This document shows positions 4,684-61,105 of a DNA stretch of 64,000 nucleotides, one piece after another; position 1 is the first letter of the stretch, and each line of letters starts with the position of its first letter. Both the position numbers and the translations under genes were made by a program. The DNA lies in sequence record LR756504.1. One strand, written 5' to 3'. The notes under the pieces are model-generated. The model worked only from the letters and a program-made list of their open reading frames with translations, did not search any database and was not told the DNA's origin.

Positions 4684-4708
4684 TATATATTATTTATAGT
4701 ATATATAA
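4684..4708 (-). promoter_or_regulatory. putative late promoter cluster (TAATATATA, TTATATATA, TATAAATA)
   Basis: Three overlapping motifs directly upstream of ATG 4679; T(A/T)ATATATA recurs before many structural genes. Confidence 0.5.
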
Positions 4709-4725
4709 AATCCAATACATTTCAA

Positions 4726-5775
4726 ATGAATATTAAAAACAAAGAATTTATAGAAAAAGCTAATAAAATACATAATAACAAATATGATTATTCATTAATT
4801 AATTATGTTAATAACAGAACAAATATTAAAATAATTTGCTCTATACACGGAGAATTTGAACAAATTCCAGATAAACACACAAACAGAAAACAAGGATGTC
4901 CTAATTGTAGCCCAACAAAAAAAATAACACATGAGTACTTTTTATCAGAAACTAAAAAAAAATATGATAATTTATTTNNNNNNNNNNNNNNNNNNNNNAA
5001 ACATTCGCATGATTACATTAAAATAATTTGTTCTAAACATGGTGAATTTAAAGAAAAACCTTATATTCATTTAAAAAGAAATACTTGCATAGGTTGTAAA
5101 AAAATAATTGTTCTTAATAGATACATCGAAGAATGTCAAGAAATACACAACAACAAATACGATTACTCTTTAGTAAAATATACTAATTGTTATAATAAAG
5201 TTGATATTATATGCTCAGAACATGGTATTTTTAAACAAGCATTACATTCTCATAAACAAGGACATGGATGTACTAAATGTGGAATTAGTATCAAATATGA
5301 AGGTTACAACTTTATAGAAAAGGCTATTAAAATACACAATAATATATATGATTATTCATTGGTTGAGTATAAAAATAATACAATTAAAGTTAAAATTATA
5401 TGTACAAAACATGGTATTTTTGATCAACAACCAGTATCCCATTTAATGGGACACGGTTGTCCAAAATGTAAATCTTCTAAAGGAGAAAAACAAATACAAA
5501 AATTTTTAGATGATAATGAAATAGAATATAATTATCAATATATAATAAATTTCAATAATAAAAAATATTTATATGATTTCCATTTACCTGAGCATAATTT
5601 ATATATTGAATATGATGGCGAACAACATTTTAAACCAGTTAAATATTTTGGCGGATTAAATAAATTTTTACAAAGAATTAATAACGATTTTCAAAAAGAT
5701 AAGTATTGTATATTAAATGATGTAAATTTATTAAGGATACCATATTGGGAAATTATTAATATAGAAAAAACATAA
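4726..5775 (+). CDS. freestanding (homing-type) endonuclease: four Zn-binding repeats plus C-terminal PD-(D/E)XK/Vsr-like nuclease
   Basis: Four repeats of KYDYSLxxY...KIICxxHGxF...HxxGxGCxxC; C-terminal YDFHLPEHNLYIEYDGEQHF. Confidence 0.8.
   Translation: MNIKNKEFIEKANKIHNNKYDYSLINYVNNRTNIKIICSIHGEFEQIPDKHTNRKQGCPNCSPTKKITHEYFLSETKKKYDNLFXXXXXXXKHSHDYIKIICSKHGEFKEKPYIHLKRNTCIGCKKIIVLNRYIEECQEIHNNKYDYSLVKYTNCYNKVDIICSEHGIFKQALHSHKQGHGCTKCGISIKYEGYNFIEKAIKIHNNIYDYSLVEYKNNTIKVKIICTKHGIFDQQPVSHLMGHGCPKCKSSKGEKQIQKFLDDNEIEYNYQYIINFNNKKYLYDFHLPEHNLYIEYDGEQHFKPVKYFGGLNKFLQRINNDFQKDKYCILNDVNLLRIPYWEIINIEKT
4978..4998. other. assembly gap (21 N)
   Basis: Run of 21 n inside repeat 2 of the endonuclease; the frame is preserved. 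Confidence 0.99.
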
Positions 5776-7160: not shown

Positions 7161-7169
7161 TAATATATA
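7161..7169 (+). promoter_or_regulatory. putative late promoter TAATATATA
   Basis: 20 nt upstream of the baseplate wedge ATG. Confidence 0.5.
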
Positions 7170-7189: not shown

Positions 7190-8935
7190 ATGAATCTTAA
7201 ATTTATTGAGGTTAAATTTCAAACATTAAAGACTGAAATTAATGACTTTATCAAGAAAACATACAATAAATCCGATGTTTTATTATCAGCAAGCGATCCT
7301 TACGGACATATTTTAGGTGCAATTGAGATGATTTTTAGTTCATCTTTACTTTATTTAAAGAATGTAACTGCTCAATTTGATATTAACAACCCAAAGAATA
7401 CTAATGGTAAAATGATAAAAGCCTTAGCGAGAGTTGGTGGGTATAATCCTGGGAGAGCTATAAGTGCTACTGGTACTCTCACATTACAATTAAAACCTGG
7501 CATAGATATTTTAGAAGAAATTCCTGGTGGTGAAATCACTATTTTACATGGATCTAAAATAACTAACAAAAGTAATAATTTAGATTATTATATTGATTTA
7601 GGTATAGAAAAAGCGTCTTACTTATTGAGTCATAATACTAAATATTTTTTACCTGTGGTTCAAGGTAAAGTAGAGACATTTCCATTTACTGGAACTGGTG
7701 AACAACTACAGTCATTTTCGGTAGATTTGCCTAATGGGCAATCACCTGAACAATTTAGAATAACTGTTAAGGTTGATGGACAAATATGGAGTATAAAAGA
7801 CCATTTATATGATATACTTACAGATGAAGAAGCTTGTGTTGTACGAACTGGTATTAATGGTGGATTAGATATTTATTTTGGAACAGGGTTTTTTGGAAAA
7901 ATACCAGGTATAAGTGATGAAATAGAAGTTAGATATGTTGTGTCAGATGGTTCATTAGGTAATATTCCACATAAATTAGTTAATGATTGGACATTTACTG
8001 ACGAACTTTTTGATAAATTTGGAACACCTGTTGATATTGAAAAAAACTTTAATGTATTTATAGAAAATGAAGTGAGTATGGGTGGCGATTCAGAAAATCC
8101 ATTATTTACAAAAGCTATATTACCACATGTTTCAAGAAACTTTGTTTTAGCAAGACCTGAACAATATATTTTCCATTTAAAGAGATTAAATGTATTTTCT
8201 CAAATTGATGCTTATACAACAGAAAAAGGAACTGATAATGATGATGGGAATGATAAAGATGATTCTGTAGTATATTTATTTTTAATTCCTGATATTGCAT
8301 TATTTCTACAAGGTGGTACATCATATTTTGATTTAGATTTAAATGCTTTTATTTTAGAACAATTTGAAAAAGATAAAGTTGAGAGATATTTAAGAACACA
8401 AGGTACTATAGGTTTAGGTAATGCTGTTAAAATTATTGATCCTATAATTAGGAAATATATTATTAATATTCATTTAAGAATTTTTGAAGATGCTAATGAA
8501 GATAATATTAGAAGTGAAATTAGTAGTAACCTTAGCTCATACTTTGGAACTTTAGTAAGGAGAGGTATTATTCCTAAATCAGACATTATTAGAATTATAG
8601 AAGAGATTGATGGTGTTGACTCAATAGATTGTAGTTTTATATCGGAATCAAATGAATCATATCATTTAAGCTTTGAAAAATATAAACAAAGTATAATGAG
8701 AAACAATCCAAAAGCTAATCCATTAACTATCAAAATGACTGGTTATGATCCAAATAGAGTAATTGGATTAGATCCTAAACTTGGTGATATTCTTTATAAT
8801 AAGAATGAATTACCTATCATAAGAGGTGGATTTAGAACTAGAAATGATATTTATTATAATGAAACACCAAACAGTAAAGGACTAAGCTCAATTAACATAG
8901 AAATACTTGGCATTAGTAAAAGAACGATGTTTTAA
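7190..8935 (+). CDS. baseplate wedge subunit (T4 gp6 / baseplate J-like)
   Basis: ARVGGYNPGRAISATGTL, GLDIYFGTGFFGKIP, IEVRYVVSDGSLGN, GGDSE...ILPHVSRNFVLARPEQY pattern. Confidence 0.85.
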   Translation: MNLKFIEVKFQTLKTEINDFIKKTYNKSDVLLSASDPYGHILGAIEMIFSSSLLYLKNVTAQFDINNPKNTNGKMIKALARVGGYNPGRAISATGTLTLQLKPGIDILEEIPGGEITILHGSKITNKSNNLDYYIDLGIEKASYLLSHNTKYFLPVVQGKVETFPFTGTGEQLQSFSVDLPNGQSPEQFRITVKVDGQIWSIKDHLYDILTDEEACVVRTGINGGLDIYFGTGFFGKIPGISDEIEVRYVVSDGSLGNIPHKLVNDWTFTDELFDKFGTPVDIEKNFNVFIENEVSMGGDSENPLFTKAILPHVSRNFVLARPEQYIFHLKRLNVFSQIDAYTTEKGTDNDDGNDKDDSVVYLFLIPDIALFLQGGTSYFDLDLNAFILEQFEKDKVERYLRTQGTIGLGNAVKIIDPIIRKYIINIHLRIFEDANEDNIRSEISSNLSSYFGTLVRRGIIPKSDIIRIIEEIDGVDSIDCSFISESNESYHLSFEKYKQSIMRNNPKANPLTIKMTGYDPNRVIGLDPKLGDILYNKNELPIIRGGFRTRNDIYYNETPNSKGLSSINIEILGISKRTMF

Positions 8936-8937: not shown

Positions 8938-10809
8938 ATGAAGTATATTAAGAATTTTAGTGATAAACTTTTTGAGAATCTTATTTTAGAAAAAGAACTT
9001 ATCATAAGTGATAAATTAAAAGATATTCTTAAGAAAATGAGGCATCCATTTGCATCATTAATATTATCTAAGCTTGGTGAAGATTTAGTTGATAGTTCAT
9101 ATATAGATATTGACAAAGAACCTGGTATGATTAATTATATTCCTTATAATAAAGAAATTGACTTCCATACTAAGAAAGAGTTAACTGAGCCTGATAAGTG
9201 GATTAAAAGTAGAACTAAACAGCCTATAGCTAGAGTTATTAAACCAATATTATCAAAGTTGAATATAATATTCAACGAATCAGATATTGAAAAATTTGTA
9301 AATGAATATAAGTCATTACAGAAACCATCTAAATTTATTTTAGCCGAAGGTAAAGATATAATTAAATATTATTCAGAAAGAAACTATTCACATGATAATG
9401 AAGAAAGTTCGAGTTTAACACATAGTTGTATGAGATATGATGATGCTGGAAAATATCTTTCAGTATACGTAAATAATCCAAATGTAAAATTAGTTGTAAT
9501 GCTTGATGAATATAATAAAGTTTCTGGTAGAGCAGTATTGTGGTTAAATGCAACAGCAAATGACAAACCGTGTATTTTTATGGATAGAATCTATACCGCT
9601 AAACAAGCATATGAAGAATCATTTAAAAATTATGCTATAAGTAATAATTGGTGGTTTAAAGTTTATCAAAGAGCATCTGATGATGATATAACTAATGGTA
9701 AAGATTCGATAATTAATGCAAAAATTAGAGTTGTTATACCAAATGATGATTGGAATCATATTAAAAAACCATATATGGACACACTTCCATATTTAAAAGA
9801 GGAGTTTGTAAATAATAAATTTGCATATACATTAAGTAATTTTGCAGGAAATACTGATTGGAAAGAAATGTGGACAAATCAAGACGGTGCTTGTACAAAA
9901 AGTACTAATTATGAAAGTTCTGAAATGGAAATGAATCTAATTTCATCTGAATTAGAATTAGATATTTCTAAATTAGTGCCACAAAAATCAAAAGGTGTGT
10001 ATCAATACGGAAATGCTAAATATTGGATAACTCCTTTAGAAAATGCTAAGAAAAGATGTGTAACTAAATTAATGAAAGATGATAATTGGAAAAGATTTGC
10101 TACTGTTAAAACTTTATCAAAAAGATATGACTATTTAATAAGAAATCAAGTTAGTGAAAAAGTTAAGGATGATATAAAAGAGTCACCAGAAAAATATATT
10201 AAATTATTATATGATACTTTAACTCCTTTTTATTGGGTGAGTAGTTTAACATCAAATATTGTAGATGGTGATAAAAAGGAATTCCTTTCTATTATATTAG
10301 AAGGTTTATTAGTAAATAAAACTATTTATAATAAATTTATAAATTTAATGCATTCTGAATTATATACATTTTATAATTTTGGTGAAATCATTGATAATTT
10401 AAAAGAATTTTCAAAAGAAAATGTAACTAAAATTGTAGACTTATATAATGGACATGATACAAAAAGATTGAGACAATTTATAATTGATAAATTTGAGAAC
10501 AAAAATAAGCCAGATAATAAATTTAATAAATTTGTTGTTGAAACTTTACCGAGAGAGCAATTAATAGCTGAATTAGATGATACTCTTTTCATTGAATATA
10601 ATTATATTCAAATTGCTAAAATAAATTCTGAATTTTTTGATGAAGAGAAATTTATGCAAGATGTTTATAAAGATGTTAAAAATTCTAAATATAGTTTAAA
10701 ATGGACATGTGAACTTTTAGCAAGATTTGAAGAAATTAGAGCAAATGTTATATCTACTGATGGTGTTGAGATTATTATTTCAGGAAAATGTATTTACAGA
10801 ATAAAATAA
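8938..10809 (+). CDS. SCMR-domain family protein, paralogue 1 (with N-terminal leader)
   Basis: SCMRY...GRAVLW...FMDRIY...WWFK...KPYMDT; leader MKYIKNFSDKLFENLILE. Confidence 0.8.
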   Translation: MKYIKNFSDKLFENLILEKELIISDKLKDILKKMRHPFASLILSKLGEDLVDSSYIDIDKEPGMINYIPYNKEIDFHTKKELTEPDKWIKSRTKQPIARVIKPILSKLNIIFNESDIEKFVNEYKSLQKPSKFILAEGKDIIKYYSERNYSHDNEESSSLTHSCMRYDDAGKYLSVYVNNPNVKLVVMLDEYNKVSGRAVLWLNATANDKPCIFMDRIYTAKQAYEESFKNYAISNNWWFKVYQRASDDDITNGKDSIINAKIRVVIPNDDWNHIKKPYMDTLPYLKEEFVNNKFAYTLSNFAGNTDWKEMWTNQDGACTKSTNYESSEMEMNLISSELELDISKLVPQKSKGVYQYGNAKYWITPLENAKKRCVTKLMKDDNWKRFATVKTLSKRYDYLIRNQVSEKVKDDIKESPEKYIKLLYDTLTPFYWVSSLTSNIVDGDKKEFLSIILEGLLVNKTIYNKFINLMHSELYTFYNFGEIIDNLKEFSKENVTKIVDLYNGHDTKRLRQFIIDKFENKNKPDNKFNKFVVETLPREQLIAELDDTLFIEYNYIQIAKINSEFFDEEKFMQDVYKDVKNSKYSLKWTCELLARFEEIRANVISTDGVEIIISGKCIYRIK

Positions 10810-10810
10810 C

Positions 10811-10819
10811 TAATATATA
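10811..10819 (+). promoter_or_regulatory. putative late promoter TAATATATA
   Basis: Between paralogues 1 and 2, 21 nt upstream of ATG 10841. Confidence 0.5.
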
Positions 10820-10840
10820 GTGAGTAAAACTTAAAAGATT

Positions 10841-12874
10841 ATGAACGAATTAATTCAATTAATTAACATTTTAAATGGACTTGTAGAAGAAAAAGAAATC
10901 GTTCTTGGTCCAACTCTTATCAAAAAATTAAAGGCTATGGATAGCCCTATTGCAAAATTCATTTTAGATTGTGCTGTTGAAAAACTTGACTTAGACGTCG
11001 ATTATTCATTTGTTGAATTTGATGAACAAGATGCAATGGTATCTCTTCTTAAAAATAGATGGGAGGATGAAGTCGGCAAAGATATATTCACTTCAAAAAG
11101 AAGAGAAAAGATGAAAATAAGCCGTTTAATTATGGCTTTAACTGTTAAGAAAGGTATTAAATTTCCAGAAAAAGAAATTGAAGAATTTGTTAATCAATAT
11201 AAATCTTCACAAAAGAAATTTGAATTTAGAGAAATAGAAGGTAGAGAAATAAAAGAATGGTATAATGAAAGAAATTATACTAATGATAGGGATGGGAATC
11301 CGTCTCTACACAATTCTTGTATGAGATTAGCAGAGACACAAAGCTACTTTACTGTTTATATGGAAAGCCCCAATGTTAGATTATTAGCATTGATTGATAA
11401 TGACACAAATAAATTAATGGGTAGAGCTATTGTATGGAAAAATGCACATATGGATGGTGTTGGTGAAGTAACTTATATGGATAGAGTTTATACCGCTAAA
11501 CAAGCATATGAAAATTTATTTAAAGATTATGCTAAATCTAAAGGTTGGTGGTTTAGAGTAGTTCAAACAAATCAAGATATGACAATTACAAATGGTACTG
11601 AAAAAAAATCAAACTGGATAATTGATTGTCAAATTGCGGATTTAGATTGGTCGCGTTATAATAAACCTTATATGGATTCATTAAAATATATGACATATAT
11701 GAGAAAGAATGGAAGATATGTTCCTGTAATGACAAATAATTCAAATAACTATAAAGAATTGTGGCAATCAACATCAGGTTCGGGTACAACAAATAATAAT
11801 TATGTCAGTGAGCACGAAAGACTACTATCAGTAGCTAGAGCTTTAGGTATTGATCAAGCATCATTAAAAGTATCCGATAATGATGAAAAAATAATAGTGC
11901 GTGATGATGGTGTTGATTTTGCATCATATTCTATGCAAGAATTGCAATTAGTTGGTGCTATAAAATTTATAGAAAAAGATAAAATAAGAGACATCGATCC
12001 TGCCAATTATATAAACATTATTCCTAATCGTGAAATTTGGGAAAAACTTAGTGAAATGTCGGTTGATGTTATAGTAGATAAATTAGTAGAATTTGAAAAA
12101 TATATTAATAAACAAAATGGTGTTAATTTATTAATTGATATTAGTACAGATGAAGAAATTCTTAGACAATTCAAATATTATTTAAATAAAAGATATGATG
12201 ATGTACTTCATTATTTAATGAAAAATGCTAAACCAAATTTAGAAAGATTTGTAGAATCTGCATCGAAATCAAAAGTAAATAAGAAAAAAATAGTTAAAGA
12301 AAGTATAGATGATGATAACGATGAAGATGATGTTAAAAATGATACTAAAGGTGTGATACAAAAAGGTGATATAAATGAGCCAGTATCATTAGATAACTTA
12401 TTAAAACAAACAGAAGTTAATATTCAACATATGGTGGACTTTTATGAAAAAAGTAAAGCTAACAAAGATGTATGTATATCATTTTTAAAACATAAAATTG
12501 CTCGTTTAAAAATAAGATTTTTCTTGAAGAAATTTGGTAAAGATGATGATAAAAGAAAACGTTTGGTTATAGAACAAGTTATACCAGCATTATCAAACAG
12601 TATGCAACCATTAGAGTTTGTAAAAAATTATCTTAAAATTTCTAATAAAGAATTCTTCAAAATAATTAGTGAAAATTTAAATAGAAATATTATTGAAAGA
12701 GTTGCAATGAACACTCTTCAAAATAATCCTGACGTTAGAAAAGAACTATTATCTATCGATAATAGAGAATTGAGAAGTGGTAATTACTATATCTATAAAG
12801 TTAAAGATGATGATAAAAAGGAAGGTGATGTGGAAATTAAGAAACGAGGACCAGGCAGACCCAGAAAAAAATAA
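10841..12874 (+). CDS. SCMR-domain family protein, paralogue 2 (leader plus C-terminal AT-hook)
   Basis: SCMRL...GRAIVW...YMDRVY...WWFR...KPYMDS; ends KKRGPGRPRKK. Confidence 0.8.
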   Translation: MNELIQLINILNGLVEEKEIVLGPTLIKKLKAMDSPIAKFILDCAVEKLDLDVDYSFVEFDEQDAMVSLLKNRWEDEVGKDIFTSKRREKMKISRLIMALTVKKGIKFPEKEIEEFVNQYKSSQKKFEFREIEGREIKEWYNERNYTNDRDGNPSLHNSCMRLAETQSYFTVYMESPNVRLLALIDNDTNKLMGRAIVWKNAHMDGVGEVTYMDRVYTAKQAYENLFKDYAKSKGWWFRVVQTNQDMTITNGTEKKSNWIIDCQIADLDWSRYNKPYMDSLKYMTYMRKNGRYVPVMTNNSNNYKELWQSTSGSGTTNNNYVSEHERLLSVARALGIDQASLKVSDNDEKIIVRDDGVDFASYSMQELQLVGAIKFIEKDKIRDIDPANYINIIPNREIWEKLSEMSVDVIVDKLVEFEKYINKQNGVNLLIDISTDEEILRQFKYYLNKRYDDVLHYLMKNAKPNLERFVESASKSKVNKKKIVKESIDDDNDEDDVKNDTKGVIQKGDINEPVSLDNLLKQTEVNIQHMVDFYEKSKANKDVCISFLKHKIARLKIRFFLKKFGKDDDKRKRLVIEQVIPALSNSMQPLEFVKNYLKISNKEFFKIISENLNRNIIERVAMNTLQNNPDVRKELLSIDNRELRSGNYYIYKVKDDDKKEGDVEIKKRGPGRPRKK

Positions 12875-12927
12875 AGTAATAAAAAAGCCCTTTAAAATTT
12901 TAAAGGGCTTTTTTATTACTTTATTTT
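12868..12927. terminator. 60-bp perfect palindrome / bidirectional terminator
   Basis: aaaataaagtaataaaaaagccctttaaaa|ttttaaagggcttttttattactttatttt between convergent paralogues. Confidence 0.85.
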
Positions 12928-14736
12928 GTATATGTAATGTCTGAGAATATTGTGTTCTCGCTCATCAATTGATAGTAATTTTTTTCTTTGCACATCTTTA
13001 ATTTGATTTTCAATCAAATCTACTAAATTAATATATCTCTCTATTTTTTTATATTTATCTGTTGTAAATGATTTTTCAATAAAATCTAATACATCAATAC
13101 ATAATGATGAATTTACCAACATATCAATAATATTAGAATCAGTATAATCATCTAAAGATATTTCACTAAAAAATCTTTGTTTTATTTCGGTAGTACCATA
13201 TTCTTCTAAAAACATTCCAACTACTTCATATAAAGCTTTTCTTGAATTAGTATTATCATTATCATAACCATATTCAATAATTTTACAATTTAATTCATTA
13301 AACTCATTAAGCTGAGTCCAACTACTAAATAGGTATGGTGCAGATGTTACAACTTGTGAAAAACCAAATTGTGAATGTTGAAATTTATCAGTAAGTCTTC
13401 TATAATAATCTCTATTTGTTATAAATGGTCTGACTAAATTTAAAAATTCTTCTCTGCTTAATTTTGTGAAAATTCTTACGTAGTTATTTTTATCTTTCTT
13501 TAAAGTTGACCAAAATTTATCCTTATTTTCACGAACATATTTAATTAATTCATTTTTATAATTTCTGTAAAAGTCACTACTTAAATTTGGAAACTTTAAC
13601 TGAAATTTTACAATATTTTCAAATGGATTTTTTAAAAATATACTTTTTACAGAATAATTTAATTCATCACCGCTATTAAAAATTTGGTATGATTCTTCAC
13701 CAATTGAATATGTATTATTATCAATTTTTATAAAATCATTAATATTTTTGTTAAGTACTTGTGCAAGAGAAAATGGTTTATCCAATGGATGTGAATAACT
13801 ATGATTAATAACAACATTACTTTGGTGATCACCAAAGCTTTGTCTATGTGCAAGAGTATCGTTATTATTTGTTAAAAATAATCCATATGTACCATCACTC
13901 TTAGGTAAAAATTTCATTAGTCTTAGTGAATCAACATAAGGACTTTTAACATTATAATTATAGTTAACATCTGTTCTAATTTCGGCTATTAAAAGTGGTT
14001 TTAATTGTTGTGTTATACCATTGGTTATTTCTGGATTTTCATTACCTTGTCTTATTTTAAACCACCATCCTCTTGCTGTAGCATACTGTTTGAATTTTTC
14101 AACAATTGAATCATTGATAGAATAAATTCTATCCATATAAGTTCCAACAGCACCATTAATTAGAATGCCATTCCAAATTAACGCTCTTCCTTCAACTTTT
14201 CCATCATCATTTAATAATGCAAGAACACCAACAACTTGTGAATTTTCCGTATATAAAGTGAACCATTCTTGACATTTATCAAATCTCATACAAGAATTCA
14301 ATAGAGAACACCCAGATGATGAATATGATGAGTTTTTATTATATGTACTTTCATTGTAATATTTACCAAAGTCTTTACCGTGAGATAATATAAAATTACC
14401 ATTATCTCTAGCACATCTATATTTATTTACAAATATTTCAATTTCGGCATCTGTAAATTCAATATTTTTACTTTGTAATATTGATCTTACGACTCTACCG
14501 ATTTTAACACTTGTTCTAACTTTAACTTTCCATTTTTCTTCCTCTGATAATCCATCTTCTTTATTTATGGGAAGATAGCTGAATATTGTAGTATCTGTTT
14601 CGGAATCAATGTAGCTAAATTTTAAATCCAATACATCTTCTTTGGAATTCAAATCCAATAAAATAATAGAAATTTTATCATTAATACGTCTCAAAGTAGA
14701 AATTAATGAATTTCCTAAAATAATTTTCTTACTCAT
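12916..14736 (-). CDS. SCMR-domain family protein, paralogue 3 (leaderless; start likely 14736, MSKKIILG)
   Basis: SCMRF...GRALIW...YMDRIY...WWFK...SPYVDS; start chosen by alignment with paralogue 4. Confidence 0.8.
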   Translation of the reverse strand: MSKKIILGNSLISTLRRINDKISIILLDLNSKEDVLDLKFSYIDSETDTTIFSYLPINKEDGLSEEEKWKVKVRTSVKIGRVVRSILQSKNIEFTDAEIEIFVNKYRCARDNGNFILSHGKDFGKYYNESTYNKNSSYSSSGCSLLNSCMRFDKCQEWFTLYTENSQVVGVLALLNDDGKVEGRALIWNGILINGAVGTYMDRIYSINDSIVEKFKQYATARGWWFKIRQGNENPEITNGITQQLKPLLIAEIRTDVNYNYNVKSPYVDSLRLMKFLPKSDGTYGLFLTNNNDTLAHRQSFGDHQSNVVINHSYSHPLDKPFSLAQVLNKNINDFIKIDNNTYSIGEESYQIFNSGDELNYSVKSIFLKNPFENIVKFQLKFPNLSSDFYRNYKNELIKYVRENKDKFWSTLKKDKNNYVRIFTKLSREEFLNLVRPFITNRDYYRRLTDKFQHSQFGFSQVVTSAPYLFSSWTQLNEFNELNCKIIEYGYDNDNTNSRKALYEVVGMFLEEYGTTEIKQRFFSEISLDDYTDSNIIDMLVNSSLCIDVLDFIEKSFTTDKYKKIERYINLVDLIENQIKDVQRKKLLSIDEREHNILRHYIYKIK

Positions 14737-14870
14737 GTTTGATTTAAATTGAATTAATATTTGATAGAATATTTCATATATACTATTGAATATCAACAAT
14801 ATATATTATTGACAATATTAAATGAGCCTTTTTGATAATTTAAAATACCCATTAATACCTTTAATTTTAA

Positions 14871-14902
14871 CAAAGATAGTTAATATGTTTATATAAAACA
14901 AG
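14871..14902 (-). promoter_or_regulatory. Bacteroidota-type promoter (near consensus)
   Basis: Minus strand CTTG-N20-TATCTTTG upstream of paralogue 3. Confidence 0.55.
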
Positions 14903-15257: not shown

Positions 15258-15824
15258 ATGAGAGTTGATCACATGGCTTTTAGGGTAGCAGATAAAGAAA
15301 AAACTGCTAAATTTTTCATAGAATGTTTTGGCTATAGATTAGCCGAAGATTTACCAGATGGATTTGATATTACATTTGAAGATAATACTACAGCTAAATG
15401 TTTAGTATTATTACCACCAGAAAAAGCTATAGGTGGTGCTAATTTACCATGGTTAACATATATGACAGATTTTGATAAGAAGTTAGGACAAGAATATCAT
15501 TTAGCTCCTGAAATATTTATATCGCAAGGTTCGCCTGGTTCTGTAGTTGATGAATGGGTTAAAAAAAGACAAGTGTATGGTGGAGCACTTTTACACCATA
15601 TCGCATATCAAGTTGATTCGGTTGAACTAAAAATGAAAGAATGGCAAGAAAAAGGATATGCTGAATTTACTACAGAAAAACCTTTAACATGCCCAGGTCT
15701 TACTCAAGTATTTACTAAACCATCCGAACTTACAGGTATTATATATGAATTTATTGAAAGAGAGTCGCACGGTTTCTGTAAAGAGAATGTAAAAGACTTG
15801 ATGAATTCTACTAAAGGACTATAA
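15258..15824 (+). CDS. VOC (glyoxalase / methylmalonyl-CoA epimerase / HPPD-like) superfamily protein
   Basis: RVDHMAFRV, LHHIAYQVDSV, QVFTKP...IYEFIER metal-ligand pattern. Confidence 0.8.
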   Translation: MRVDHMAFRVADKEKTAKFFIECFGYRLAEDLPDGFDITFEDNTTAKCLVLLPPEKAIGGANLPWLTYMTDFDKKLGQEYHLAPEIFISQGSPGSVVDEWVKKRQVYGGALLHHIAYQVDSVELKMKEWQEKGYAEFTTEKPLTCPGLTQVFTKPSELTGIIYEFIERESHGFCKENVKDLMNSTKGL

Positions 15825-18547: not shown

Positions 18548-21181
18548 CTATATATTATCACCACCCTTATTCTTCTTCAAATAATCTTTAAAAGATTTCA
18601 AATCTGAAAATTTATCTGGTTGAATATATTTATGATCAACCGTTGGATTTACATCTTCATTAGGATATGTTATTGATTTTTTTGTATTAGAATTTATATC
18701 TTCGTTAGGATCATTAATTTTAGTATTTATGGATTGGTTAACATTTTCAGACGGCTTTTTTATTTCGCCTTTACCTTCCATTAAATCTTCTTTCGGTGAT
18801 TTAATATCATGTTTTACAACACCATTTAAATCTTCTTTTGGTGCGATAAACTTATGATTTATTTTATCATTCAAATCAACTACTTTACCATTATTATCAG
18901 GATTAGTAATTACATCTCCTTTTGGATTTTGTAAATTTTCGTTTGGTGATTTAATATCATGTATAATATCAAGGTTTACATCTTCATTAGGATTTACATA
19001 TTTAAAGTTTTTAACTGGATTTACATCTTCATTAGGATTTACATATTTAAAGTTTTTAACTGGATTTACATCTTCATTAGGATTTACATATTTAAAGTTT
19101 TTAACTGGATTTACATCTTCTACAGGAGTTGTAATATTATGTCCAGTAGAAGGTTGTAAATTTTCATTAGGATTTACAAATTTATAATTTTTATCTGGGT
19201 GTAAGTCTTCATTTGGTTGAACTGATGTATATTTATATTTCGTATTTGTATAAGCATCTGTTGTACCACTTACTAATACTTTGCCTTCATCATTGTTTTT
19301 ATTAACAAATAAAGGATTATTAATATCTAAAATTATAGATGATTTAGGATTCTTATTTGAATTATAAATGTATGTTGCACTACTTGGTATGCCTGCTACA
19401 TTGGCTATAATACCGCTATCATTAACATTATAACTAAATTCTGGAGTATCAGTTAGAGGTGTTTGAATACTCATATTAGTTTTAACTTCTCTCACATTCT
19501 TAGGTTTATTATTTACATATCCTAAGTCAATTGTTTTTTTAAAAACTTTATTTTGTAAAAAACTCCTTACTGATCCACCAATGTTAGTATTTATTTGATT
19601 CTTTAGAGATTGAACACCATCACTAACCACTTGAGCACCAGCTTTAACAGCATTATTTCCTATTGTCTTGGCAAATCTGCCCAAAGCTGTATCATTATTA
19701 TCATTTATAAGTAACCCTCTATTTTTAAGAACATCTAATTTTTCACCCAAACCAGGTTCTTTTCCTATATTATTAGTTGAATATTCTCTTTTTTGTGTGT
19801 TTTTGCCGCCATATCTAGTTTTACTTAAAAACACTTCATTATTAGTTAAATTTGGTGAGAAGTATTTATCGCCTAATATAAATTTATTATAATTTGAATC
19901 ATATAATGCGGAATAAAAAATTCTATTTACCTTTCTATATTTTATCTTCATTTGTAATGAAGAATAATCAGTATTTATTCCATTAAATCCACCAATTGTT
20001 AAGCTTGATGGATTTAAACTTTGTGGGAAAAAGAATTCACAGTCTTTCAATTCATAAATTACTCTTGAATAATTATTTCTGATAGCATCTCTTAAATTAT
20101 CATCGACACTTGTATGTCTTGTAAAATTTCTAATATCTGAAATTTTAATATACAAATTAAATCTTAATAAATTTTCTGGTATTAACTTTTTACCCATATT
20201 ATAAGAATATGTTAAATTTCTATAAAGAAATGCCATTCTATTTGAATACATTCTTACATCTTCATTTAAAGTGAATGTTAATGATTCTTGTTCAGTACCA
20301 AACATTCTATCTTCGCTTGATTTATAATCAACAAATAAATTATCAAGTTTATCTAACCCATCAACTTTAAAAACATAATGGTTTTTAAATATTCTTGTTT
20401 TATATTCATTACCATCAAGTGTTTCTGGACTTTCAAAAATGTTAGTAATTGAGTTTTTAAATTCATTGTAATAATCCAAAGCATACGACAATTCTCTATG
20501 TATTGGTTTATAATTAGTTATAAAGTCTGTTAGATTTGATGGTGCTGTAACTGTTTGACTATTGTCTGGTGATTCACCAGCCTTCCTACCACTACTTGTC
20601 TCCACATCACCTATAAATAATGGTGATGTCATATCCAATCTAAAGCTAACACTTAGTATAGTAGGATCTTCTATAGTATCTAAAATTGATAATAATTTAG
20701 TAGTCCCCTCTACATCAGAACTTAAATCATTATCCAAATAATACCAATATTTAAATGAATATGCGTTTTTATCTACTAACTGATCTAGATTTATTTTCCA
20801 TTTAGTACCAACGTTATATAAATTAATAGCACTAATACCAGCATCCCATAGATTACCATTATATGTGTCTTGTAAAATTCTTGATATGGAATCTTTATTT
20901 ATATTGTCTATACTTACATCTGTTGTAAGAAACTCTGAGTTGTTGTACTTATTTCTTTCAGATTTAGGTTTTAATTTATCTGCTATTGATTGAATAGCAC
21001 CATTTGCAAAATTGACACCGCTATTAAAAATATTATTAGCAGCATCAGCCAATCCACCAAACGTTTTACTACCTTGGCCAAATAAATTTTTCTCATTATT
21101 TTTCCCAATATCCTTTTTTAGTGGTAAACTGTTTTCGTCTTGGGTGTATAAATTTTTTTTAGGTGTATCGTTAGTGGCCAT
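18548..21181 (-). CDS. putative baseplate/tail structural protein with C-terminal 15-aa repeats
   Basis: 877 aa, directly upstream of the gp5-like gene; late motif upstream; PxE(D/N) repeats. Confidence 0.55.
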   Translation of the reverse strand: MATNDTPKKNLYTQDENSLPLKKDIGKNNEKNLFGQGSKTFGGLADAANNIFNSGVNFANGAIQSIADKLKPKSERNKYNNSEFLTTDVSIDNINKDSISRILQDTYNGNLWDAGISAINLYNVGTKWKINLDQLVDKNAYSFKYWYYLDNDLSSDVEGTTKLLSILDTIEDPTILSVSFRLDMTSPLFIGDVETSSGRKAGESPDNSQTVTAPSNLTDFITNYKPIHRELSYALDYYNEFKNSITNIFESPETLDGNEYKTRIFKNHYVFKVDGLDKLDNLFVDYKSSEDRMFGTEQESLTFTLNEDVRMYSNRMAFLYRNLTYSYNMGKKLIPENLLRFNLYIKISDIRNFTRHTSVDDNLRDAIRNNYSRVIYELKDCEFFFPQSLNPSSLTIGGFNGINTDYSSLQMKIKYRKVNRIFYSALYDSNYNKFILGDKYFSPNLTNNEVFLSKTRYGGKNTQKREYSTNNIGKEPGLGEKLDVLKNRGLLINDNNDTALGRFAKTIGNNAVKAGAQVVSDGVQSLKNQINTNIGGSVRSFLQNKVFKKTIDLGYVNNKPKNVREVKTNMSIQTPLTDTPEFSYNVNDSGIIANVAGIPSSATYIYNSNKNPKSSIILDINNPLFVNKNNDEGKVLVSGTTDAYTNTKYKYTSVQPNEDLHPDKNYKFVNPNENLQPSTGHNITTPVEDVNPVKNFKYVNPNEDVNPVKNFKYVNPNEDVNPVKNFKYVNPNEDVNLDIIHDIKSPNENLQNPKGDVITNPDNNGKVVDLNDKINHKFIAPKEDLNGVVKHDIKSPKEDLMEGKGEIKKPSENVNQSINTKINDPNEDINSNTKKSITYPNEDVNPTVDHKYIQPDKFSDLKSFKDYLKKNKGGDNI
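18975..19120. repeat. perfect 45-bp tandem repeat (3.2 copies), coding VNPVKNFKYVNPNED
   Basis: Unit tttacatcttcattaggatttacatatttaaagtttttaactgga starts at 18975, 19020 and 19065, with a partial copy at 19110. Confidence 0.95.
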
Positions 21182-21198: not shown

Positions 21199-21220
21199 AT
21201 TTTAATATATATATTAAAAT
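21199..21220. promoter_or_regulatory. 22-bp palindrome: putative bidirectional late promoter
   Basis: ATTTTAATATATATATTAAAAT carries TAATATATA on both strands between divergent genes. Confidence 0.6.
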
Positions 21221-58827: not shown

Positions 58828-61050
58828 TTAAATTTCAGCTATTAAATCATTACTTCTATAACCATTTTCTTCTCCGTTGCTCCATACAACGTTGTATGGA
58901 TAATAATCGTCTTCCCATGGTTCGCGATTAAACACTTGTGTGATTGTTCCAATATTTTCTGGTGCTTGTTCATAAAACTTAGAATTGGTTTTAAGTTTTA
59001 CACGAGTTTCTACACCTACTAAATTGGTATCAACAATGTCAACCCAAACCATTTTCTTTTTCAACTTCTTAATGAACGTTCTCACAGTTTCATAAGTATT
59101 GCCTGTTTTTTGAACAAGTAAATCATTTAAAGTATATGTGTTAGTATTTCCATTTTTCCAAGTAATTGAAATACTACCATTTGATTTAGTATTATCAACT
59201 ACACCATTTGTACCTTGTGATTGATTTAAATATTGACTTCCTGGTTTTAGTTTAACTACATCACCTTTCTTTATTTCTTTAACTGATGTGAAGTCTCCTG
59301 ATGAGTAATCCCAATCATAGCTCAATTCCAAAATCGCTGAACCATCATTTTTCATTAATAAATTTTCAACACCTGGCTCTAACCCATACGCGATTAGTTC
59401 TTCTACTTGAGCATGTGAAAGATTTAGCCACAGCTTATCTTCGCTATAAAATATATTAAATTTTGATGCTATCTTAGCAAGAACAGCACCATCAATAAGT
59501 TTAGTCTTGGCAAAGTCAACAACATTCTTAAGAGTGATTCTATCAGTAAAAGAATCATCAAATTTAGCCATCATTTTTAATTGAGAATCATTGTAATTAT
59601 CAATTGACGATTTGAATAATTCTGGTTTTTCTTTAACAATTTTTTCATTAAGTGTATCTGATGTAATATCAGTCATTAAAAAGTTTTGAGAATCACCTTT
59701 GATATTTCTAATCCAACCATTAACATTATTAACTCTAACATATGGATGTGTAAGAACATCAACTAATTGTTCGTGATATTCTTTGTTATATTTTTTCTTA
59801 CTGATATTTTTAATTTTATCACCAAGTTGAAAACGTGTAAAGTCATTGCTGTCATAATTCATTGCAATGAAAGTGAGCGGAACATCATTTTTATCAAAAA
59901 GAACTAATACAGTATTGCAGTTATCCGTAAGATGTCCACTTCCAGCATTGAAAATATTTTCGGGTGTTTCAATATCTGACCAATAGAAACCATTATCATA
60001 TTTAATAAATGGCTTCTTGGGCAACATCTTGTTAAGAATATCTCTTTTCTTATGATAGTGACTATTACCTTGTGGTGTACCGTCAAGTCTATCCCATCTT
60101 TCGAGCCAATTCAAATCTTTAGGACTTCTATCTTTATCATTTCTATGTGAGATAAGAACTGGTACAAGATTTTCACCTTCTAATTTATAACCAAAGAATC
60201 TCATTGTATCAGCATAAGGTTTTCTTATTCTAGAATAATCTAGAATAGGAGGAATATAAACTAACATTTTAGGATCATTGTGTACTTTTACACCATCACT
60301 AATTTCTCTAAATGGGACATGTGTTTCTTGATTTGTACCTTGTCTCATTTTAAACCACCAACCTTTTTGAATAGCATAGTTTTTAAATGTTTCTTCCAAT
60401 GGTGCATCCATAGTATAAATTCTATCCATGAATGTTACTTTACCTATATTCTCAATTCCAACATTTTCCCAAATCAAAGCTCTACCAATTAAAAGTCCTT
60501 TTTCATTGAAAAGACAAAGCATTGAAATGTCATCATTATTTTCATAAACACTAAAAAATGTATTACATTTTTCGTGTCTCATACAAGAACCATACAAACT
60601 TCTTCCTGGATTTTGTCCTTCCCCGCTATATTGACTTAAATCGTATGTTTCTTGATTGTAATATTTAGTGATGTCTTTACCTTTAACTAATTTAAAATTG
60701 TGTGGGTTTTGTGTGGTTTTATATTCATTGACAAATTGTTCAATTTCTTTGTCAATAAAATTAAGTCCTTTATTTTGAAGAAATGCTCTAATAACTTTAC
60801 CAATAGCAACCTGTTGTCTACCTTTAGTCCACTTGTCTTTATCGGGCAATTCCTCTTTAGTTTTATGGCAAAACTCTTTCCCAGCAGGAAGCCATGAAAT
60901 CATCCCATCTGCTTTATCGAAGTCAATATAAGAGTTCTCTAAAAGATTCTCTTTGTTATTGTGTGCATCAACAAGAATTTTAGCATATGGGTGTGTCATT
61001 TGTGATAACACGGAAATCAATTTGCTACTTAGTATGATTCTCTTTTCCAA
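58828..61050 (-). CDS. SCMR-domain family protein, paralogue 4 (leaderless; two C-terminal SH3/KOW-like repeats)
   Basis: SCMRH...GRALIW...FMDRIY...WWFK...KPYADT; TTG start. Confidence 0.8.
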   Translation of the reverse strand: MEKRIILSSKLISVLSQMTHPYAKILVDAHNNKENLLENSYIDFDKADGMISWLPAGKEFCHKTKEELPDKDKWTKGRQQVAIGKVIRAFLQNKGLNFIDKEIEQFVNEYKTTQNPHNFKLVKGKDITKYYNQETYDLSQYSGEGQNPGRSLYGSCMRHEKCNTFFSVYENNDDISMLCLFNEKGLLIGRALIWENVGIENIGKVTFMDRIYTMDAPLEETFKNYAIQKGWWFKMRQGTNQETHVPFREISDGVKVHNDPKMLVYIPPILDYSRIRKPYADTMRFFGYKLEGENLVPVLISHRNDKDRSPKDLNWLERWDRLDGTPQGNSHYHKKRDILNKMLPKKPFIKYDNGFYWSDIETPENIFNAGSGHLTDNCNTVLVLFDKNDVPLTFIAMNYDSNDFTRFQLGDKIKNISKKKYNKEYHEQLVDVLTHPYVRVNNVNGWIRNIKGDSQNFLMTDITSDTLNEKIVKEKPELFKSSIDNYNDSQLKMMAKFDDSFTDRITLKNVVDFAKTKLIDGAVLAKIASKFNIFYSEDKLWLNLSHAQVEELIAYGLEPGVENLLMKNDGSAILELSYDWDYSSGDFTSVKEIKKGDVVKLKPGSQYLNQSQGTNGVVDNTKSNGSISITWKNGNTNTYTLNDLLVQKTGNTYETVRTFIKKLKKKMVWVDIVDTNLVGVETRVKLKTNSKFYEQAPENIGTITQVFNREPWEDDYYPYNVVWSNGEENGYRSNDLIAEI

Positions 61051-61074: not shown

Positions 61075-61105
61075 CAAATATACAAACCTTTTTTCAAAAA
61101 ACAAA
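61075..61105 (-). promoter_or_regulatory. Bacteroidota-type promoter P1 of paralogue 4
   Basis: TTTG-N19-TATATTTG. Confidence 0.7.

What the first reader, a model, noticed from the sequence alone, without database searches (positions are those of the whole stretch)
8938..14736. Four-member SCMR-domain family with apparent virion-packaged and early-expressed versions
ORFs 8938, 10841, 12916 and the distant 58828 share a ~280-aa N-terminal domain: S(Y/F)(I/V)(D/E)...EIExFVNxY(K/R)...G(K/R)(D/E)...SCMR...GRAxxW...MDR(I/V)Y...WWF(K/R)...PYxD. Paralogues 3 and 4 start MSKKIILG and MEKRIILS. Paralogues 1 and 2 have a ~17-aa extension ending in Glu (...LILE|KELII, ...LVEE|KEIVL) exactly where the leaderless ones begin. 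The leadered pair lies in the baseplate operon behind TAATATATA; the leaderless pair lies behind host-type TAnnTTTG promoters (paralogue 3 also has TAATATATA at 14800-14808). C-termini diverge: 1-3 end in a shared (L)SxDxxE...(Y/C)IY(K/R)(I/V)K motif and 4 ends in SH3-like repeats. All of this is seen in the sequence. Inference: one enzymatic module with an invariant Cys, Arg, Asp and Tyr, possibly related to PcfJ-like/GNAT-type phage domains, that is delivered from the capsid and also made early, with swappable C-terminal targeting modules. I know of no functional description of it.
Basis: partly seen in the sequence, partly recalled or inferred. Interest (0 to 1): 0.85.

Follow-up and report, generated by a model that had tools for sequence, protein, structure and literature searches.

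The report
Two-form GNAT-like huge-phage protein family
A 636-kb phage of Bacteroidetes carries 14 copies (four in this window) of an uncharacterised, phage-wide protein module with an acetyltransferase-like fold and an invariant cysteine; copies with a short T4-like leader ending in glutamate lie behind phage-type promoters and copies without it behind host-type promoters, which fits one enzyme that is both packed into the virion and made early, although neither the packing nor the chemistry has been shown.

Summary
The four ORFs share a ~290-aa N-terminal module (profile E 1e-136 to 1e-143). The full genome (LR756504.1, 636 kb, Mahaphage clade) has 14 paralogues, sister huge phages have about 8-19, and an exhaustive search finds 4,309 protein clusters, almost all unnamed and viral.

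AlphaFold gives a confident model (pLDDT 93.5). Residues ~128-308 have a GNAT-like fold; every top hit in three structure searches is a GNAT, but Z is only 6.4-6.8. Residues 19-131 match no solved fold. Eight residues are invariant in 306 sequences (Y145, S163, C164, R198, D216, R217, Y219, P278). The GNAT CoA-binding motif is absent, and PcfJ kinship is not supported.

The ~17-aa leader is a feature of the whole family (about 80% of relatives). It ends in (I/L)-x-Glu and resembles the T4 capsid-targeting sequence. The genome encodes a T4-type protease, scaffold and capsid module.

In five genomes or contigs, a host-type TAnnTTTG box precedes 7 of 11 leaderless copies and 0 of 19 leadered ones. 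Leadered copies follow a phage TATATATA motif or sit in operons with structural genes.

Virion packaging, leader cleavage, expression timing and enzyme activity remain inferences.

The parts
7161..7169 (+). TAATATATA promoter-like motif, 20 nt before the baseplate-wedge gene that heads the P1 transcription unit
   Evidence: the same motif lies 4-5 or 15-26 nt before 21 of 45 ORFs in the window
7190..8935 (+). Baseplate wedge subunit (T4 gp6-like); P1 starts 2 nt after its stop
   Evidence: phrog_219 E 2.4e-16 and phrog_6 E 1.2e-08; its 69%-identical orthologue is likewise followed by a leadered paralogue in a related phage contig
8938..10809 (+). Paralogue 1 (623 aa), leadered, with no promoter motif of its own
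8938..8991 (+). P1 leader (aa 1-18), ending ...LILE. Predicted helix 2-15 at lower confidence than the domain. Starts with the MKY(I/L)KxF tag that recurs across the genome
   Evidence: (pLDDT 76-78 against >93 for the rest)
8992..9330 (+). N-terminal alpha/beta subdomain (aa 19-131) with no match to a solved fold
   Evidence: folds confidently on its own (pLDDT 91.2); best VIA Z 3.5, Foldseek E >= 0.76
9319..9861 (+). GNAT-like subdomain (aa 128-308) that carries the invariant residues Y145, S163, C164, R198, D216, R217, Y219 and P278
10811..10819 (+). TAATATATA motif 21 nt before P2
10841..12874 (+). Paralogue 2 (677 aa), leadered (aa 1-17, ending ...LVEE)
   Evidence: the orthologue in a related phage lies directly behind the wedge gene
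12839..12871 (+). Basic tail of P2 that resembles an AT-hook (GRP core flanked by Lys/Arg)
   Evidence: read from the translation; Lys-rich tails also end other family members; DNA binding is an inference
12916..14736 (-). Paralogue 3 (606 aa from the ATG), leaderless, convergent with P2
   Evidence: its orthologue in a related phage is leaderless with TAAATTTG 21 nt upstream
14800..14808 (-). TAATATATA 63 nt before the ATG of P3 (0 nt before an in-frame TTG at 14799)
14871..14878 (-). TATCTTTG, the nearest host-type box to P3, 134 nt from its ATG (a weak case)
   Evidence: none within 90 nt
58828..61050 (-). Paralogue 4 (740 aa, TTG start), leaderless; a stop lies 4 codons upstream
58831..59283 (-). 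C-terminal tandem repeat of P4 (aa ~590-740), possibly small SH3/Tudor-like barrels
   Evidence: two stretches each on phrog_11307, phrog_18715 and phrog_9469, all of unknown function; weak Atlas leads to Mind-bomb SH3, MIB_HERC2 and Tudor
61075..61082 (-). TATATTTG, a host sigma-A-type -7 box, 24 nt before the start of P4
   Evidence: the consensus is from PMC9723704
57176..57718 (+). Phage sigma-factor gene, itself behind a TAnnTTTG box (21 nt): a candidate early gene whose product may read the TAATATATA promoters
   Evidence: phrog_1740 E 2.4e-22; motif distance; the cascade is an inference

Best explanation
The four ORFs belong to a large family specific to phages. It has 14 copies in this 636-kb genome.

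ARCHITECTURE. The shared ~290-aa module has two parts. The first is a novel alpha/beta subdomain. The second is a GNAT-like subdomain whose strictly invariant residues lie on the elements that form the active site in GNAT enzymes:
- Tyr145 on helix alpha1;
- Ser163-Cys164 in the alpha1-alpha2 loop;
- Arg198 on strand beta3;
- Asp216-Arg217-x-Tyr219 on strand beta4;
- Pro278 and Asp281 before strand beta6.

PROPOSED CHEMISTRY (inferred). The module is an enzyme that transfers or removes an acyl-type group on a host macromolecule, possibly through the cysteine. It probably does not bind acetyl-CoA in the canonical way. The divergent C-terminal modules choose the target. These modules include zinc-finger repeats, basic or AT-hook-like tails, small beta-barrel repeats and helical regions.

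PROPOSED DELIVERY (inferred). The family comes in two forms.
- Leadered copies, such as P1 and P2, have a 12-20-aa amphipathic N-terminal helix ending in (I/L)-x-Glu. They are transcribed from the phage's own TATATATA-type promoters or in operons with structural genes. They would be targeted to the prohead, trimmed after the Glu by the phage's T4 gp21-type protease, and injected with the DNA.
- Leaderless copies, such as P3 and P4, start exactly at that cut position. They sit behind host sigma-A-type TAnnTTTG promoters and would be made early from the incoming genome.

SHOWN: the homology, the fold prediction, the invariant residues, the conservation of the leader, the link between leader and promoter motif, and the presence of the protease module.
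INFERRED: enzyme activity, cleavage, packaging and expression timing.
For: FAMILY AND FOLD.
- Profile E 1e-136 to 1e-143 for the four copies.
- 14 copies in LR756504.1. The three sister genomes gave 11, 11 and 19 matches, which come to about 8-19 genes each once split matches are merged.
- 4,309 clusters at E <= 1e-3.
- Model pLDDT 93.5, pTM 0.88.
- Nearly all of Foldseek's 50 best PDB rows are GNATs (best E 9e-4). All 50 best VIA rows are GNATs (Z 6.4 over residues 130-307; Z 6.8 for VipF). The Atlas also returns GNAT clusters.
- Eight residues are 100% invariant in 306 sequences.

LEADER.
- Of 176 relatives with an N-terminus aligned to the profile's start, 80% have a 10-23-aa leader. Glu fills the position before the domain in 89% of them, with I/L two residues earlier.
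- The leader helix has lower confidence than the domain.
- Leaderless copies have stops 4-11 codons upstream, so the domain exists naturally without the helix.
- The T4 capsid-targeting sequence MKTYQEFIAE is cleaved off after its Glu (PMC8442874). It scores in the top 1% of 10-mers against the family's leader matrix and beats 99.8% of its own shuffles.
- T4-family prohead proteases all cut after Glu, and giant-phage heads hold processed paralogue families (PMC5694885).
- The genome encodes a gp21-family protease (phrog_207, E 6e-35) next to gp22-like and gp23-like genes.

PROMOTERS.
- TAnnTTTG at promoter distance precedes 7 of 11 leaderless copies and 0 of 19 leadered or extended ones, across LR756504.1, three sister genomes and one related contig. 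My hand-computed one-sided Fisher value is about 2e-4; the copies are related to one another, so they are not independent.
- TAnnTTTG is the flavobacterial sigma-A -7 box (PMC9723704).
- The phage's own sigma-factor gene has the same box at the same spacing as P4.
- The arrangement wedge gene, then leadered copy, then convergent leaderless copy is conserved in a relative whose neighbouring genes are 57-80% identical.
Against: - There are no virion proteomes and no RNA data for this phage, so packaging, cleavage and timing are untested.
- The structural Z-scores (6.4-6.8) are below the level the tool regards as safe on their own.
- The GNAT pyrophosphate-binding motif (Q/R-x-x-G-x-G/A after beta4) is absent, and the model shows no alpha4 helix.
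- The leader could simply be a conserved structural or regulatory helix.
- The leaders of P1 and P2 score low or negative against the family-wide leader matrix (2.5 and -3.0).
- The homologue in Cellulophaga podophage phi38:1 (gp037) lies among metabolism genes and is annotated only as hypothetical, not structural. I did not check whether that record marks structural proteins at all.
- TAATATATA also precedes a helicase gene, so it is not a marker of virion genes.
- The position of P1 and P2 behind a baseplate gene suggests the tail as much as the head.
Confidence: 0.4

Rival explanations
1. The N-terminal helix is an integral or regulatory part of the protein, for example an autoinhibitory, docking or oligomerisation helix. 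It is not a cleaved capsid-targeting propeptide. The two forms would then be isoforms expressed at different times and never packed into the virion.
For: The helix is conserved family-wide, as a structural element would be. AlphaFold builds it as a regular helix. The phi38:1 homologue lies among non-structural genes. The leaders of P1 and P2 fit the family-wide consensus poorly.
Against: Natural leaderless copies begin exactly at the end of the helix, so the fold does not need it. The conserved (I/L)-x-Glu at the junction matches the specificity of the protease family this genome encodes. The helix has markedly lower model confidence than the domain.
Confidence: 0.3
2. P1 and P2 are tail or baseplate-associated virion proteins, co-expressed and assembled with the wedge. 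They are not capsid-internal ejection proteins.
For: P1 starts 2 nt after the gp6-like wedge gene. Further baseplate genes lie nearby. The wedge-then-paralogue order is conserved in a related phage.
Against: Most other leadered copies are not near recognisable tail genes; the two copies outside the window follow a helicase-like gene. An intracellular-type enzyme fold with DnaJ-type zinc fingers or basic tails is unusual for a baseplate part. The leader ending in Glu fits prohead processing.
Confidence: 0.15
3. The module is not a catalyst. It would be a GNAT-shaped binding module: a family of inhibitors, decoys or adaptors (for instance against host defences) whose many copies track diverse host targets.
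For: The CoA-binding motif and helix alpha4 are missing. Copy number is high and variable (about 8-19 per genome) and C-termini turn over fast, a pattern typical of arms-race genes.
Against: Eight residues, polar and nucleophilic ones among them (Ser-Cys, Asp-Arg-x-Tyr, Arg), are invariant in 306 sequences that are otherwise only about 24% conserved. That pattern is typical of catalytic or ligand-binding sites rather than of binding surfaces that keep changing.
Confidence: 0.2
4. The shared N-termini reflect constraints on RNA or translation initiation. The mRNAs may be leaderless or lack a Shine-Dalgarno sequence and start right after a TATATA promoter, or a mobile promoter-plus-first-codons cassette may be shared. 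In that case the N-terminus is not a protein signal.
For: In many ORFs with the MKY(L/I)KxF tag, the TATATA motif lies only 4-6 nt before the ATG. Bacteroidetes lack Shine-Dalgarno sequences (PMC6847099 abstract).
Against: The family's leaders are conserved as amino acids across phages with different codon choices. They extend 15-20 residues. P1 has the tag without any TATATA motif.
Confidence: 0.1

Closest known systems
T4 Alt / ModA / ModB ADP-ribosyltransferases
   Same: One enzymatic module present as paralogues. One of them (Alt) is packed in the head, trimmed by gp21 and injected with the DNA (PMC5694885); that ModA and ModB are made early is established knowledge. This is the same logic proposed here.
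   Different: The fold and chemistry differ (ART fold against GNAT-like). There are 3 copies in T4 against 14 here. No sequence or structural relation was found.
T4 internal proteins and their capsid-targeting sequence (MKTYQEFIAE)
   Same: A short N-terminal tag ending in Glu and removed by the prohead protease (PMC8442874). The family-wide leader consensus shares the pattern K-x-Y-x-(D/E)-F-(I/L)-x-E.
   Different: The leaders here are longer (12-20 aa), and a second conserved (I/L)-L-E lies at the junction. The leaders of P1 and P2 themselves are divergent. No cleavage data exist.
Paralogous, proteolytically processed head/ejection proteins of giant phages (SPN3US paralogue families A and B, phiKZ inner-body proteins)
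   Same: Multi-copy families in giant-phage virions, short shared N-terminal propeptides, and cleavage after Glu by a gp21-family protease (PMC5694885).
   Different: Those families have no known leaderless, early-expressed twins, and they are unrelated in sequence to this module (no PHROG hit).
GNAT (Gcn5-related N-acetyltransferase) superfamily, e.g. RimI 7n1l, Legionella effector VipF 7wx7
   Same: The order of secondary-structure elements over residues ~128-308 follows beta1-alpha1-alpha2-beta2-beta3-beta4-alpha3-beta5...beta6-beta7.
   Different: No Q/R-x-x-G-x-G/A motif, no alpha4 helix, a long alpha1-alpha2 loop carrying an invariant Ser-Cys, and an extra N-terminal subdomain of unknown fold. 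Sequence identity is 7-15% and Z is only 6.4-6.8.
PcfJ-like domain (Pfam PF14284)
   Same: To the eye, both have a Cys-containing motif (HCVG against SCMR) followed by helices and beta-strands.
   Different: Profile-profile probability is 0.1%. PcfJ relatives carry PF14284 in the precomputed tables, whereas no family member does.
Phage Mu Mom (recalled from memory, not tested here)
   Same: A phage protein with a GNAT-like fold that lacks the canonical acetyl-CoA motif and modifies a macromolecule (DNA).
   Different: Mom is a single-copy late gene with no leader or variable C-terminal modules. No comparison was run.

Membership tests
GNAT superfamily | Mixed alpha/beta core with the order beta1-alpha1-alpha2-beta2-beta3-beta4-alpha3-beta5-(alpha4)-beta6-beta7 | tested here: met
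   The secondary-structure order in the model fits. All 50 best VIA rows are GNATs (Z 6.4, rmsd 3.9 over 113 residues; Z 6.8 in the second look). Nearly all of Foldseek's 50 best PDB rows are GNATs (probability up to 0.97). The strength is moderate: Z is below 8.
GNAT superfamily | Motif A, Q/R-x-x-G-x-G/A, at the beta4-alpha3 turn, which binds the CoA pyrophosphate | tested here: not met
   The family consensus after beta4 reads FMDRIYxxxDxxxxxFKxYA, with no conserved Gly.
GNAT superfamily | Helix alpha4 (motif B) after beta5 | tested here: not met
   The secondary-structure assignment of the model shows no helix between residues 241 and 263.
GNAT superfamily | Acyl-CoA-dependent acyl transfer | not testable with these tools
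   This needs biochemistry.
PcfJ-like (PF14284) | Match to the Pfam model or to a PcfJ profile | tested here: not met
   None of the listed relatives carries PF14284 (3, 120), whereas all 101 listed PcfJ relatives do. hhalign of A3 against the PcfJ profile A4 gives probability 0.1%. Caveat: the PcfJ profile is shallow (9 sequences).
T4-type capsid-targeting propeptide | A short tag at the extreme N-terminus, ending in Glu with I/L at P3 | tested here: met
   P1 ends ...L-I-L-E and P2 ends ...L-V-E-E. In the family, Glu occupies that position in 89% of cases, with I/L two residues before it.
T4-type capsid-targeting propeptide | A gp21-family (S77) prohead protease and a scaffold/core in the same genome | tested here: met
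   phrog_207 E 6.3e-35 at LR756504.1 186557-187495, next to a gp22-like ORF and a gp23-like capsid gene (phrog_138, E 1e-19). These genes lie outside the window.
T4-type capsid-targeting propeptide | Sequence likeness to the T4 tag | tested here: inconclusive
   The T4 tag scores in the top 1% against the family leader matrix, but P1 and P2 themselves score only 2.5 and -3.0.
T4-type capsid-targeting propeptide | Presence in virions with the tag removed | not testable with these tools
   The phage is uncultured, and only its source DNA run holds the locus.
DnaJ/BSD2-type cysteine-rich domain (PF00684 / PF25436) | Tandem CxxCxGxG repeats | tested here: met
   Met for paralogues outside the window (loci L005 and L006) and for most relatives. 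None of the four window copies has them.
SH3-like / MIB_HERC2 repeats (C-terminus of P4) | Small beta-barrel repeat recognised by a profile or a fold match | tested here: inconclusive
   Two tandem stretches match three PHROGs of unknown function. Atlas feature scores are 0.77-0.81 and TM 0.38-0.44 to Mind-bomb SH3, MIB_HERC2 and Tudor clusters. No dedicated model was made.

The most novel reading that the evidence does not exclude
The family would be a new class of phage effector enzymes: a GNAT-derived fold that has lost canonical CoA binding and works through an invariant Ser-Cys / Asp-Arg-x-Tyr site, fused to a fold not seen before. Its N-terminal K-x-Y-x-(D/E)-F-(I/L)-x-E ... (I/L)-L-E leader would be a capsid-delivery signal in use across thousands of uncultured phages. 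Huge phages would then load their heads with a dozen differently targeted copies and also express leaderless twins from host promoters straight after entry.
Probability: 0.2. Interest if true: 0.85.

Novelty: new variant of a known kind. Interest (0 to 1): 0.62.

Why it matters
- The largest known phage genomes are mostly unannotated. This single module accounts for about 8-19 genes in each of the four Mahaphage genomes examined and for more than 4,000 unnamed protein clusters in metagenomes. A function for it would therefore annotate a large block of viral dark matter.
- The pairing of leader with phage promoter, and of no leader with host promoter, gives a prediction that can be read from sequence alone: which copies are injected and which are made early.
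- If the leader is a capsid-targeting tag, it would extend the T4 mechanism far beyond T4-like coliphages. It would also offer a way to list candidate ejected proteins in uncultured phages.
- The invariant Ser-Cys and Asp-Arg-x-Tyr residues on a GNAT-like scaffold without the CoA motif point to chemistry not yet described for this fold.

Tried and rejected
- Sequence libraries gave nothing for the shared domain: PHROGs, NCBIfam, PADLOC, and PDB sequences with two profiles.
- PcfJ kinship was tested with pCF10 PcfJ alone and with a nine-sequence profile. Probability was 0.1-0.2%, so it was rejected.
- The word-index search with the 310-aa domain found only 3 proteins. The exhaustive profile search was needed.
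- Cluster names were uninformative: 'hypothetical', or 'DnaJ-class chaperone' because of the zinc fingers.
- T4 head proteins searched with phmmer and tblastn against the 348-kb record that holds the window found nothing. The head module lies in the part of the 636-kb genome that this record lacks, and PHROG profiles found it there.
- Expression evidence was not available. Only the source DNA run holds the locus. The phi38:1 transcriptome paper uses a different gene numbering and no supplement is held, so the timing of its homologue could not be read.
- A literature search for 'PcfJ' returned only C. elegans pCFJ plasmids.
- The C-terminal region of P1 gave no usable feature hit and only weak LRR-like shape matches, from a low-confidence Atlas model. 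It was not pursued.
- The N-terminal subdomain was folded alone. It matched nothing.
- The BFVD search found remote structural relatives in cultured phages (Caulobacter Lullwater, Klebsiella KpV48, Shigella Buco and others). I could not fetch or examine them.
- Complex prediction was not used, because no specific protein-protein contact is claimed.

Full report
WHAT IS THERE. The window belongs to an uncultured phage genome, LR756504.1 (636,363 bp; 100% identity over 8 kb). It is one of the four largest complete phage genomes described by Al-Shayeb et al. 2020. That paper places it in the Mahaphage clade and predicts a Bacteroidetes host (PMC7162821). The record that holds the window is 26% G+C.

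A profile built from them scores E 1e-136 to 1e-143 on each copy, so chance is excluded.

THE FAMILY IS FAR LARGER THAN FOUR.
- The 348-kb record that holds the window has six copies.
- The full 636-kb genome has 14.
- The three sister huge phages (635, 642 and 735 kb) gave 11, 11 and 19 matches, or about 8-19 genes each once split matches are merged.
- An exhaustive profile search of 1.84 billion representative proteins finds 4,309 clusters at E <= 1e-3 and 870 at E <= 1e-30.
- The Atlas labels the nearest clusters viral and 'hypothetical'.
- Among cultured phages, only the Cellulophaga podophages of the phi38:1, phi40:1 and Calle group carry a recognisable copy. It is annotated as hypothetical and lies among metabolism genes.
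- The usual architecture elsewhere is: leader, domain (often with an insertion), then DnaJ/BSD2-type CxxCxGxG zinc-finger repeats. Pfam recognises only those repeats (PF25436, PF00684).
- The domain itself has no Pfam, PHROG, NCBIfam, PADLOC or PDB sequence match.

FOLD. I modelled P1 residues 1-310 using an alignment of 93 diverse relatives. The model has pLDDT 93.5 and pTM 0.88.
- Residues ~128-308 are GNAT-like. Nearly all of Foldseek's 50 best PDB rows are GNAT acetyltransferases (best E 9e-4, probability up to 0.97).
- An independent all-against-all structural search gives 50 GNATs out of 50 (best Z 6.4, rmsd 3.9 over 113 residues).
- A second look at Foldseek's matches raises this to Z 6.8 for the Legionella effector VipF.
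- The Atlas shape search also returns GNAT clusters.

The Z-scores are modest, and the tool warns that values under 8 can reflect only a common arrangement. I therefore rate the fold assignment as moderately supported. The main argument for it is that the hits are so uniform.

Two defining GNAT features fail. There is no Q/R-x-x-G-x-G/A motif after beta4 (the consensus reads FMDRIYxxxDxxxxxFKxYA). The model also shows no alpha4 helix.

Residues 19-131 fold confidently on their own (pLDDT 91.2). They match nothing solved (best Z 3.5; Foldseek E >= 0.76).

INVARIANT RESIDUES. In 306 family sequences, Y145, S163, C164, R198, D216, R217, Y219 and P278 are 100% conserved. M165, Y177, W202 and D281 are conserved at 99% or more. 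In the 93-sequence alignment, mean column identity is 24%.

By the secondary structure of the model, these residues lie on alpha1, the alpha1-alpha2 loop, beta3, beta4 and the loop before beta6. In GNAT enzymes these elements surround the acceptor and acyl-donor site; that point rests on established knowledge of the fold. I had no access to the model coordinates, so I could not check whether the residues cluster in space. Calling the module an enzyme is an inference.

THE LEADER. They are a feature of the whole family.
- Of 176 relatives with an N-terminus aligned to the profile's start, 80% have a 10-23-aa extension, 14% have none and 6% have longer ones. The sample is biased towards one subfamily.
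- The consensus is K-Y-x-(D/E)-F-(I/L)-N-E-S-L-E-L-(I/L) followed by L-E-S. Glu fills the second position after the boundary in 89% of leaders, with I/L two residues before that Glu.
- That pattern matches what T4-family prohead proteases cut. All of them cleave after Glu (PMC5694885).
- The T4 capsid-targeting sequence is MKTYQEFIAE and is removed by one cut (PMC8442874). It scores in the top 1% of all 10-mers against the family's leader matrix and beats 99.8% of its own shuffles. I regard this as suggestive, not decisive.
- P1 and P2 themselves score only 2.5 and -3.0.
- In the model the leader is a helix (residues 2-15) at pLDDT 76-78, against more than 93 for the domain.
- Leaderless paralogues have stops 4-11 codons upstream of their starts, so the domain exists naturally without the helix.
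- The full genome encodes a gp21-family protease (phrog_207, E 6e-35) next to a gp22-like scaffold ORF rich in (I/L)-x-E sites and a gp23-like capsid gene (phrog_138, E 1e-19), in the same order as in T4.

PROMOTERS. The count of TAATATATA in the window is not above chance (14 found, 11.8 expected). However, 12 of the 14 copies lie 0-27 nt before an ORF start. The relaxed form (T/A)ATATATA precedes 21 of 45 ORFs in two tight spacing classes, 4-5 nt and 15-26 nt. The genes it precedes include baseplate genes, the two giant ORFs and a helicase. It therefore marks phage-specific transcription rather than virion genes alone.

TAnnTTTG is the sigma-A -7 box of flavobacteria (PMC9723704). In the window it precedes P4 (24 nt) and the phage's own sigma-factor gene (21 nt). 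This fits a cascade in which host-read early genes include the factor that reads the TATATATA promoters, but the cascade is an inference.

I then classified every paralogue I could.
- In LR756504.1, 3 of 5 leaderless copies have TAnnTTTG within 40 nt, against 0 of 9 leadered or extended copies. Six of those nine have T(A)ATATATA 5-26 nt upstream, and the other three directly follow an upstream gene.
- In the three sister genomes the figures are 3 of 5 leaderless against 0 of 8 leadered at promoter distance.
- A related phage contig shares the neighbouring genes at 57-80% identity. There the wedge gene is followed after 8 nt by a leadered P2 orthologue. A convergent, leaderless P3 orthologue has TAAATTTG 21 nt upstream. 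A further leadered copy has AATATATA 4 nt upstream.
- In total, TAnnTTTG precedes 7 of 11 leaderless copies and 0 of 19 leadered ones. My hand-computed one-sided Fisher value is about 2e-4. It is about 1e-3 if one TAACTTTG lying 5 nt from an ATG is counted as a promoter. Orthologues and paralogues are related, so these are not independent trials.
- P3 in the window is the weakest case. Its nearest host-type box is 134 nt away, and TAATATATA lies 63 nt away.

C-TERMINI. The regions downstream of the domain in the 14 paralogues show no significant BLAST similarity to one another.
- P1-P3 and their orthologues share only a terminal S(I/T)D..E...YIYK(I/V)K motif.
- P2 ends in a basic tail that resembles an AT-hook. 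Other members end in Lys-rich tails.
- The two copies outside the window carry zinc-finger repeats.
- P4 ends in a tandem repeat that matches three PHROGs of unknown function and has only weak likeness to SH3- or Tudor-type barrels.
- 'Swappable targeting modules' is a fair description of this pattern. What the modules target is unknown.

INTERPRETATION. A phage-specific module derived from the GNAT fold, probably catalytic, is made in two forms. One form has a T4-like propeptide and is co-expressed with phage-specific or structural genes. The other has no propeptide and sits behind host-type promoters.

The closest analogies are:
- T4 Alt (packed, processed and injected) together with ModA and ModB (made early);
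- the T4 internal proteins with their targeting tag;
- the processed paralogue families in giant-phage heads.

Four rivals remain open:
- the helix is a structural or regulatory part of the protein;
- P1 and P2 belong to the baseplate;
- the module binds a partner and does not catalyse a reaction;
- the shared N-termini reflect constraints on translation initiation.

Packaging, cleavage, expression timing and chemistry are all untested. No RNA or proteome data exist for this phage.

VERDICT.
- I rate the novelty as a new variant of known kinds (the GNAT fold, and capsid-delivered plus early paralogues).
- Interest is moderately high. The reasons are the size of the family, its expansion in the largest known phages, and the leader-to-promoter rule, which can be read from sequence and tested at the bench.

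Noticed in passing
Whole 348-kb record; in the window 8938 (P1), 38658-39722 (-), 56469-57035 (-), 58056-58760 (-): An N-terminal tag, M-K-(Y/H/F)-(L/I)-K-x-(F/Y), often followed by E-(D/N)-(F/Y), opens 23-30 of 564 ORFs, where about 3.6 are expected from the internal rate. These ORFs are otherwise mostly unrelated; many are small and acidic. None of the 23 strict cases has a TAnnTTTG box upstream. Many have a TATATA motif only 4-6 nt before the ATG. The tag could be a targeting signal shared by many proteins, a requirement of leaderless mRNAs, or part of a mobile promoter cassette.
   Followed up: partly
Window-wide, e.g. 4684-4692, 18549-18557, 21203-21216, 27882-27890, 29772-29780, 42989-42997, 57059-57067, 58766-58774: (T/A)ATATATA lies before 21 of 45 ORFs in two tight spacing classes, 4-5 nt and 15-26 nt from the start codon. 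The short class would give mRNAs with almost no 5' leader.
   Followed up: partly
57176-57718 (+): The phage-encoded sigma factor (phrog_1740) has a host-type TAnnTTTG box 21 nt upstream. It is a candidate early gene whose product may read the TAATATATA promoters.
   Followed up: no
29828-38566 (-) and 46011-53387 (-): Two giant ORFs of 2,912 and 2,458 aa, each with a TATATATA-type motif 17-24 nt upstream. I did not examine them.
   Followed up: no
4726-5775 (+): An HNH/homing-endonuclease gene (phrog_559, E 6.5e-75) lies between structural-type genes. In the related contig L064 the flanking 906-aa gene has the opposite orientation, so the region has been rearranged.
   Followed up: no
LR756504.1 183588-187495 (outside the window): A T4-order head module: a gp21-family protease inside a 769-aa open frame, a gp22-like scaffold, and a gp23-like capsid protein. 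The capsid protein's N-terminus (KWSPILE ... IHE then NVGY) parallels the T4 gp23 propeptide (the comparison with T4 is from memory). The profile match to the capsid gene is split and crosses one TAA.
   Followed up: partly
The record holding the window (347,857 b) compared with LR756504.1 (636,363 b): The IMG/VR record that holds the window is classed as complete, with inverted terminal repeats. Yet it covers only part of the curated 636-kb genome and lacks the head module. The 'complete' label looks doubtful.
   Followed up: no
LR756504.1 283548-284384 (-), locus L014: One paralogue has a 140-aa N-terminal extension in place of the short leader. It starts MLHPMLFFDDFLNEE, behind a TATATATA motif 6 nt upstream. 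Another (L018) has a ~160-aa extension that ends in a leader-like helix.
   Followed up: no
15258-15824 (+): A glyoxalase/VOC-like ORF sits in the baseplate region. It is conserved at 80% identity in the related phage contig, where Pfam gives weak Glyoxalase hits.
   Followed up: no
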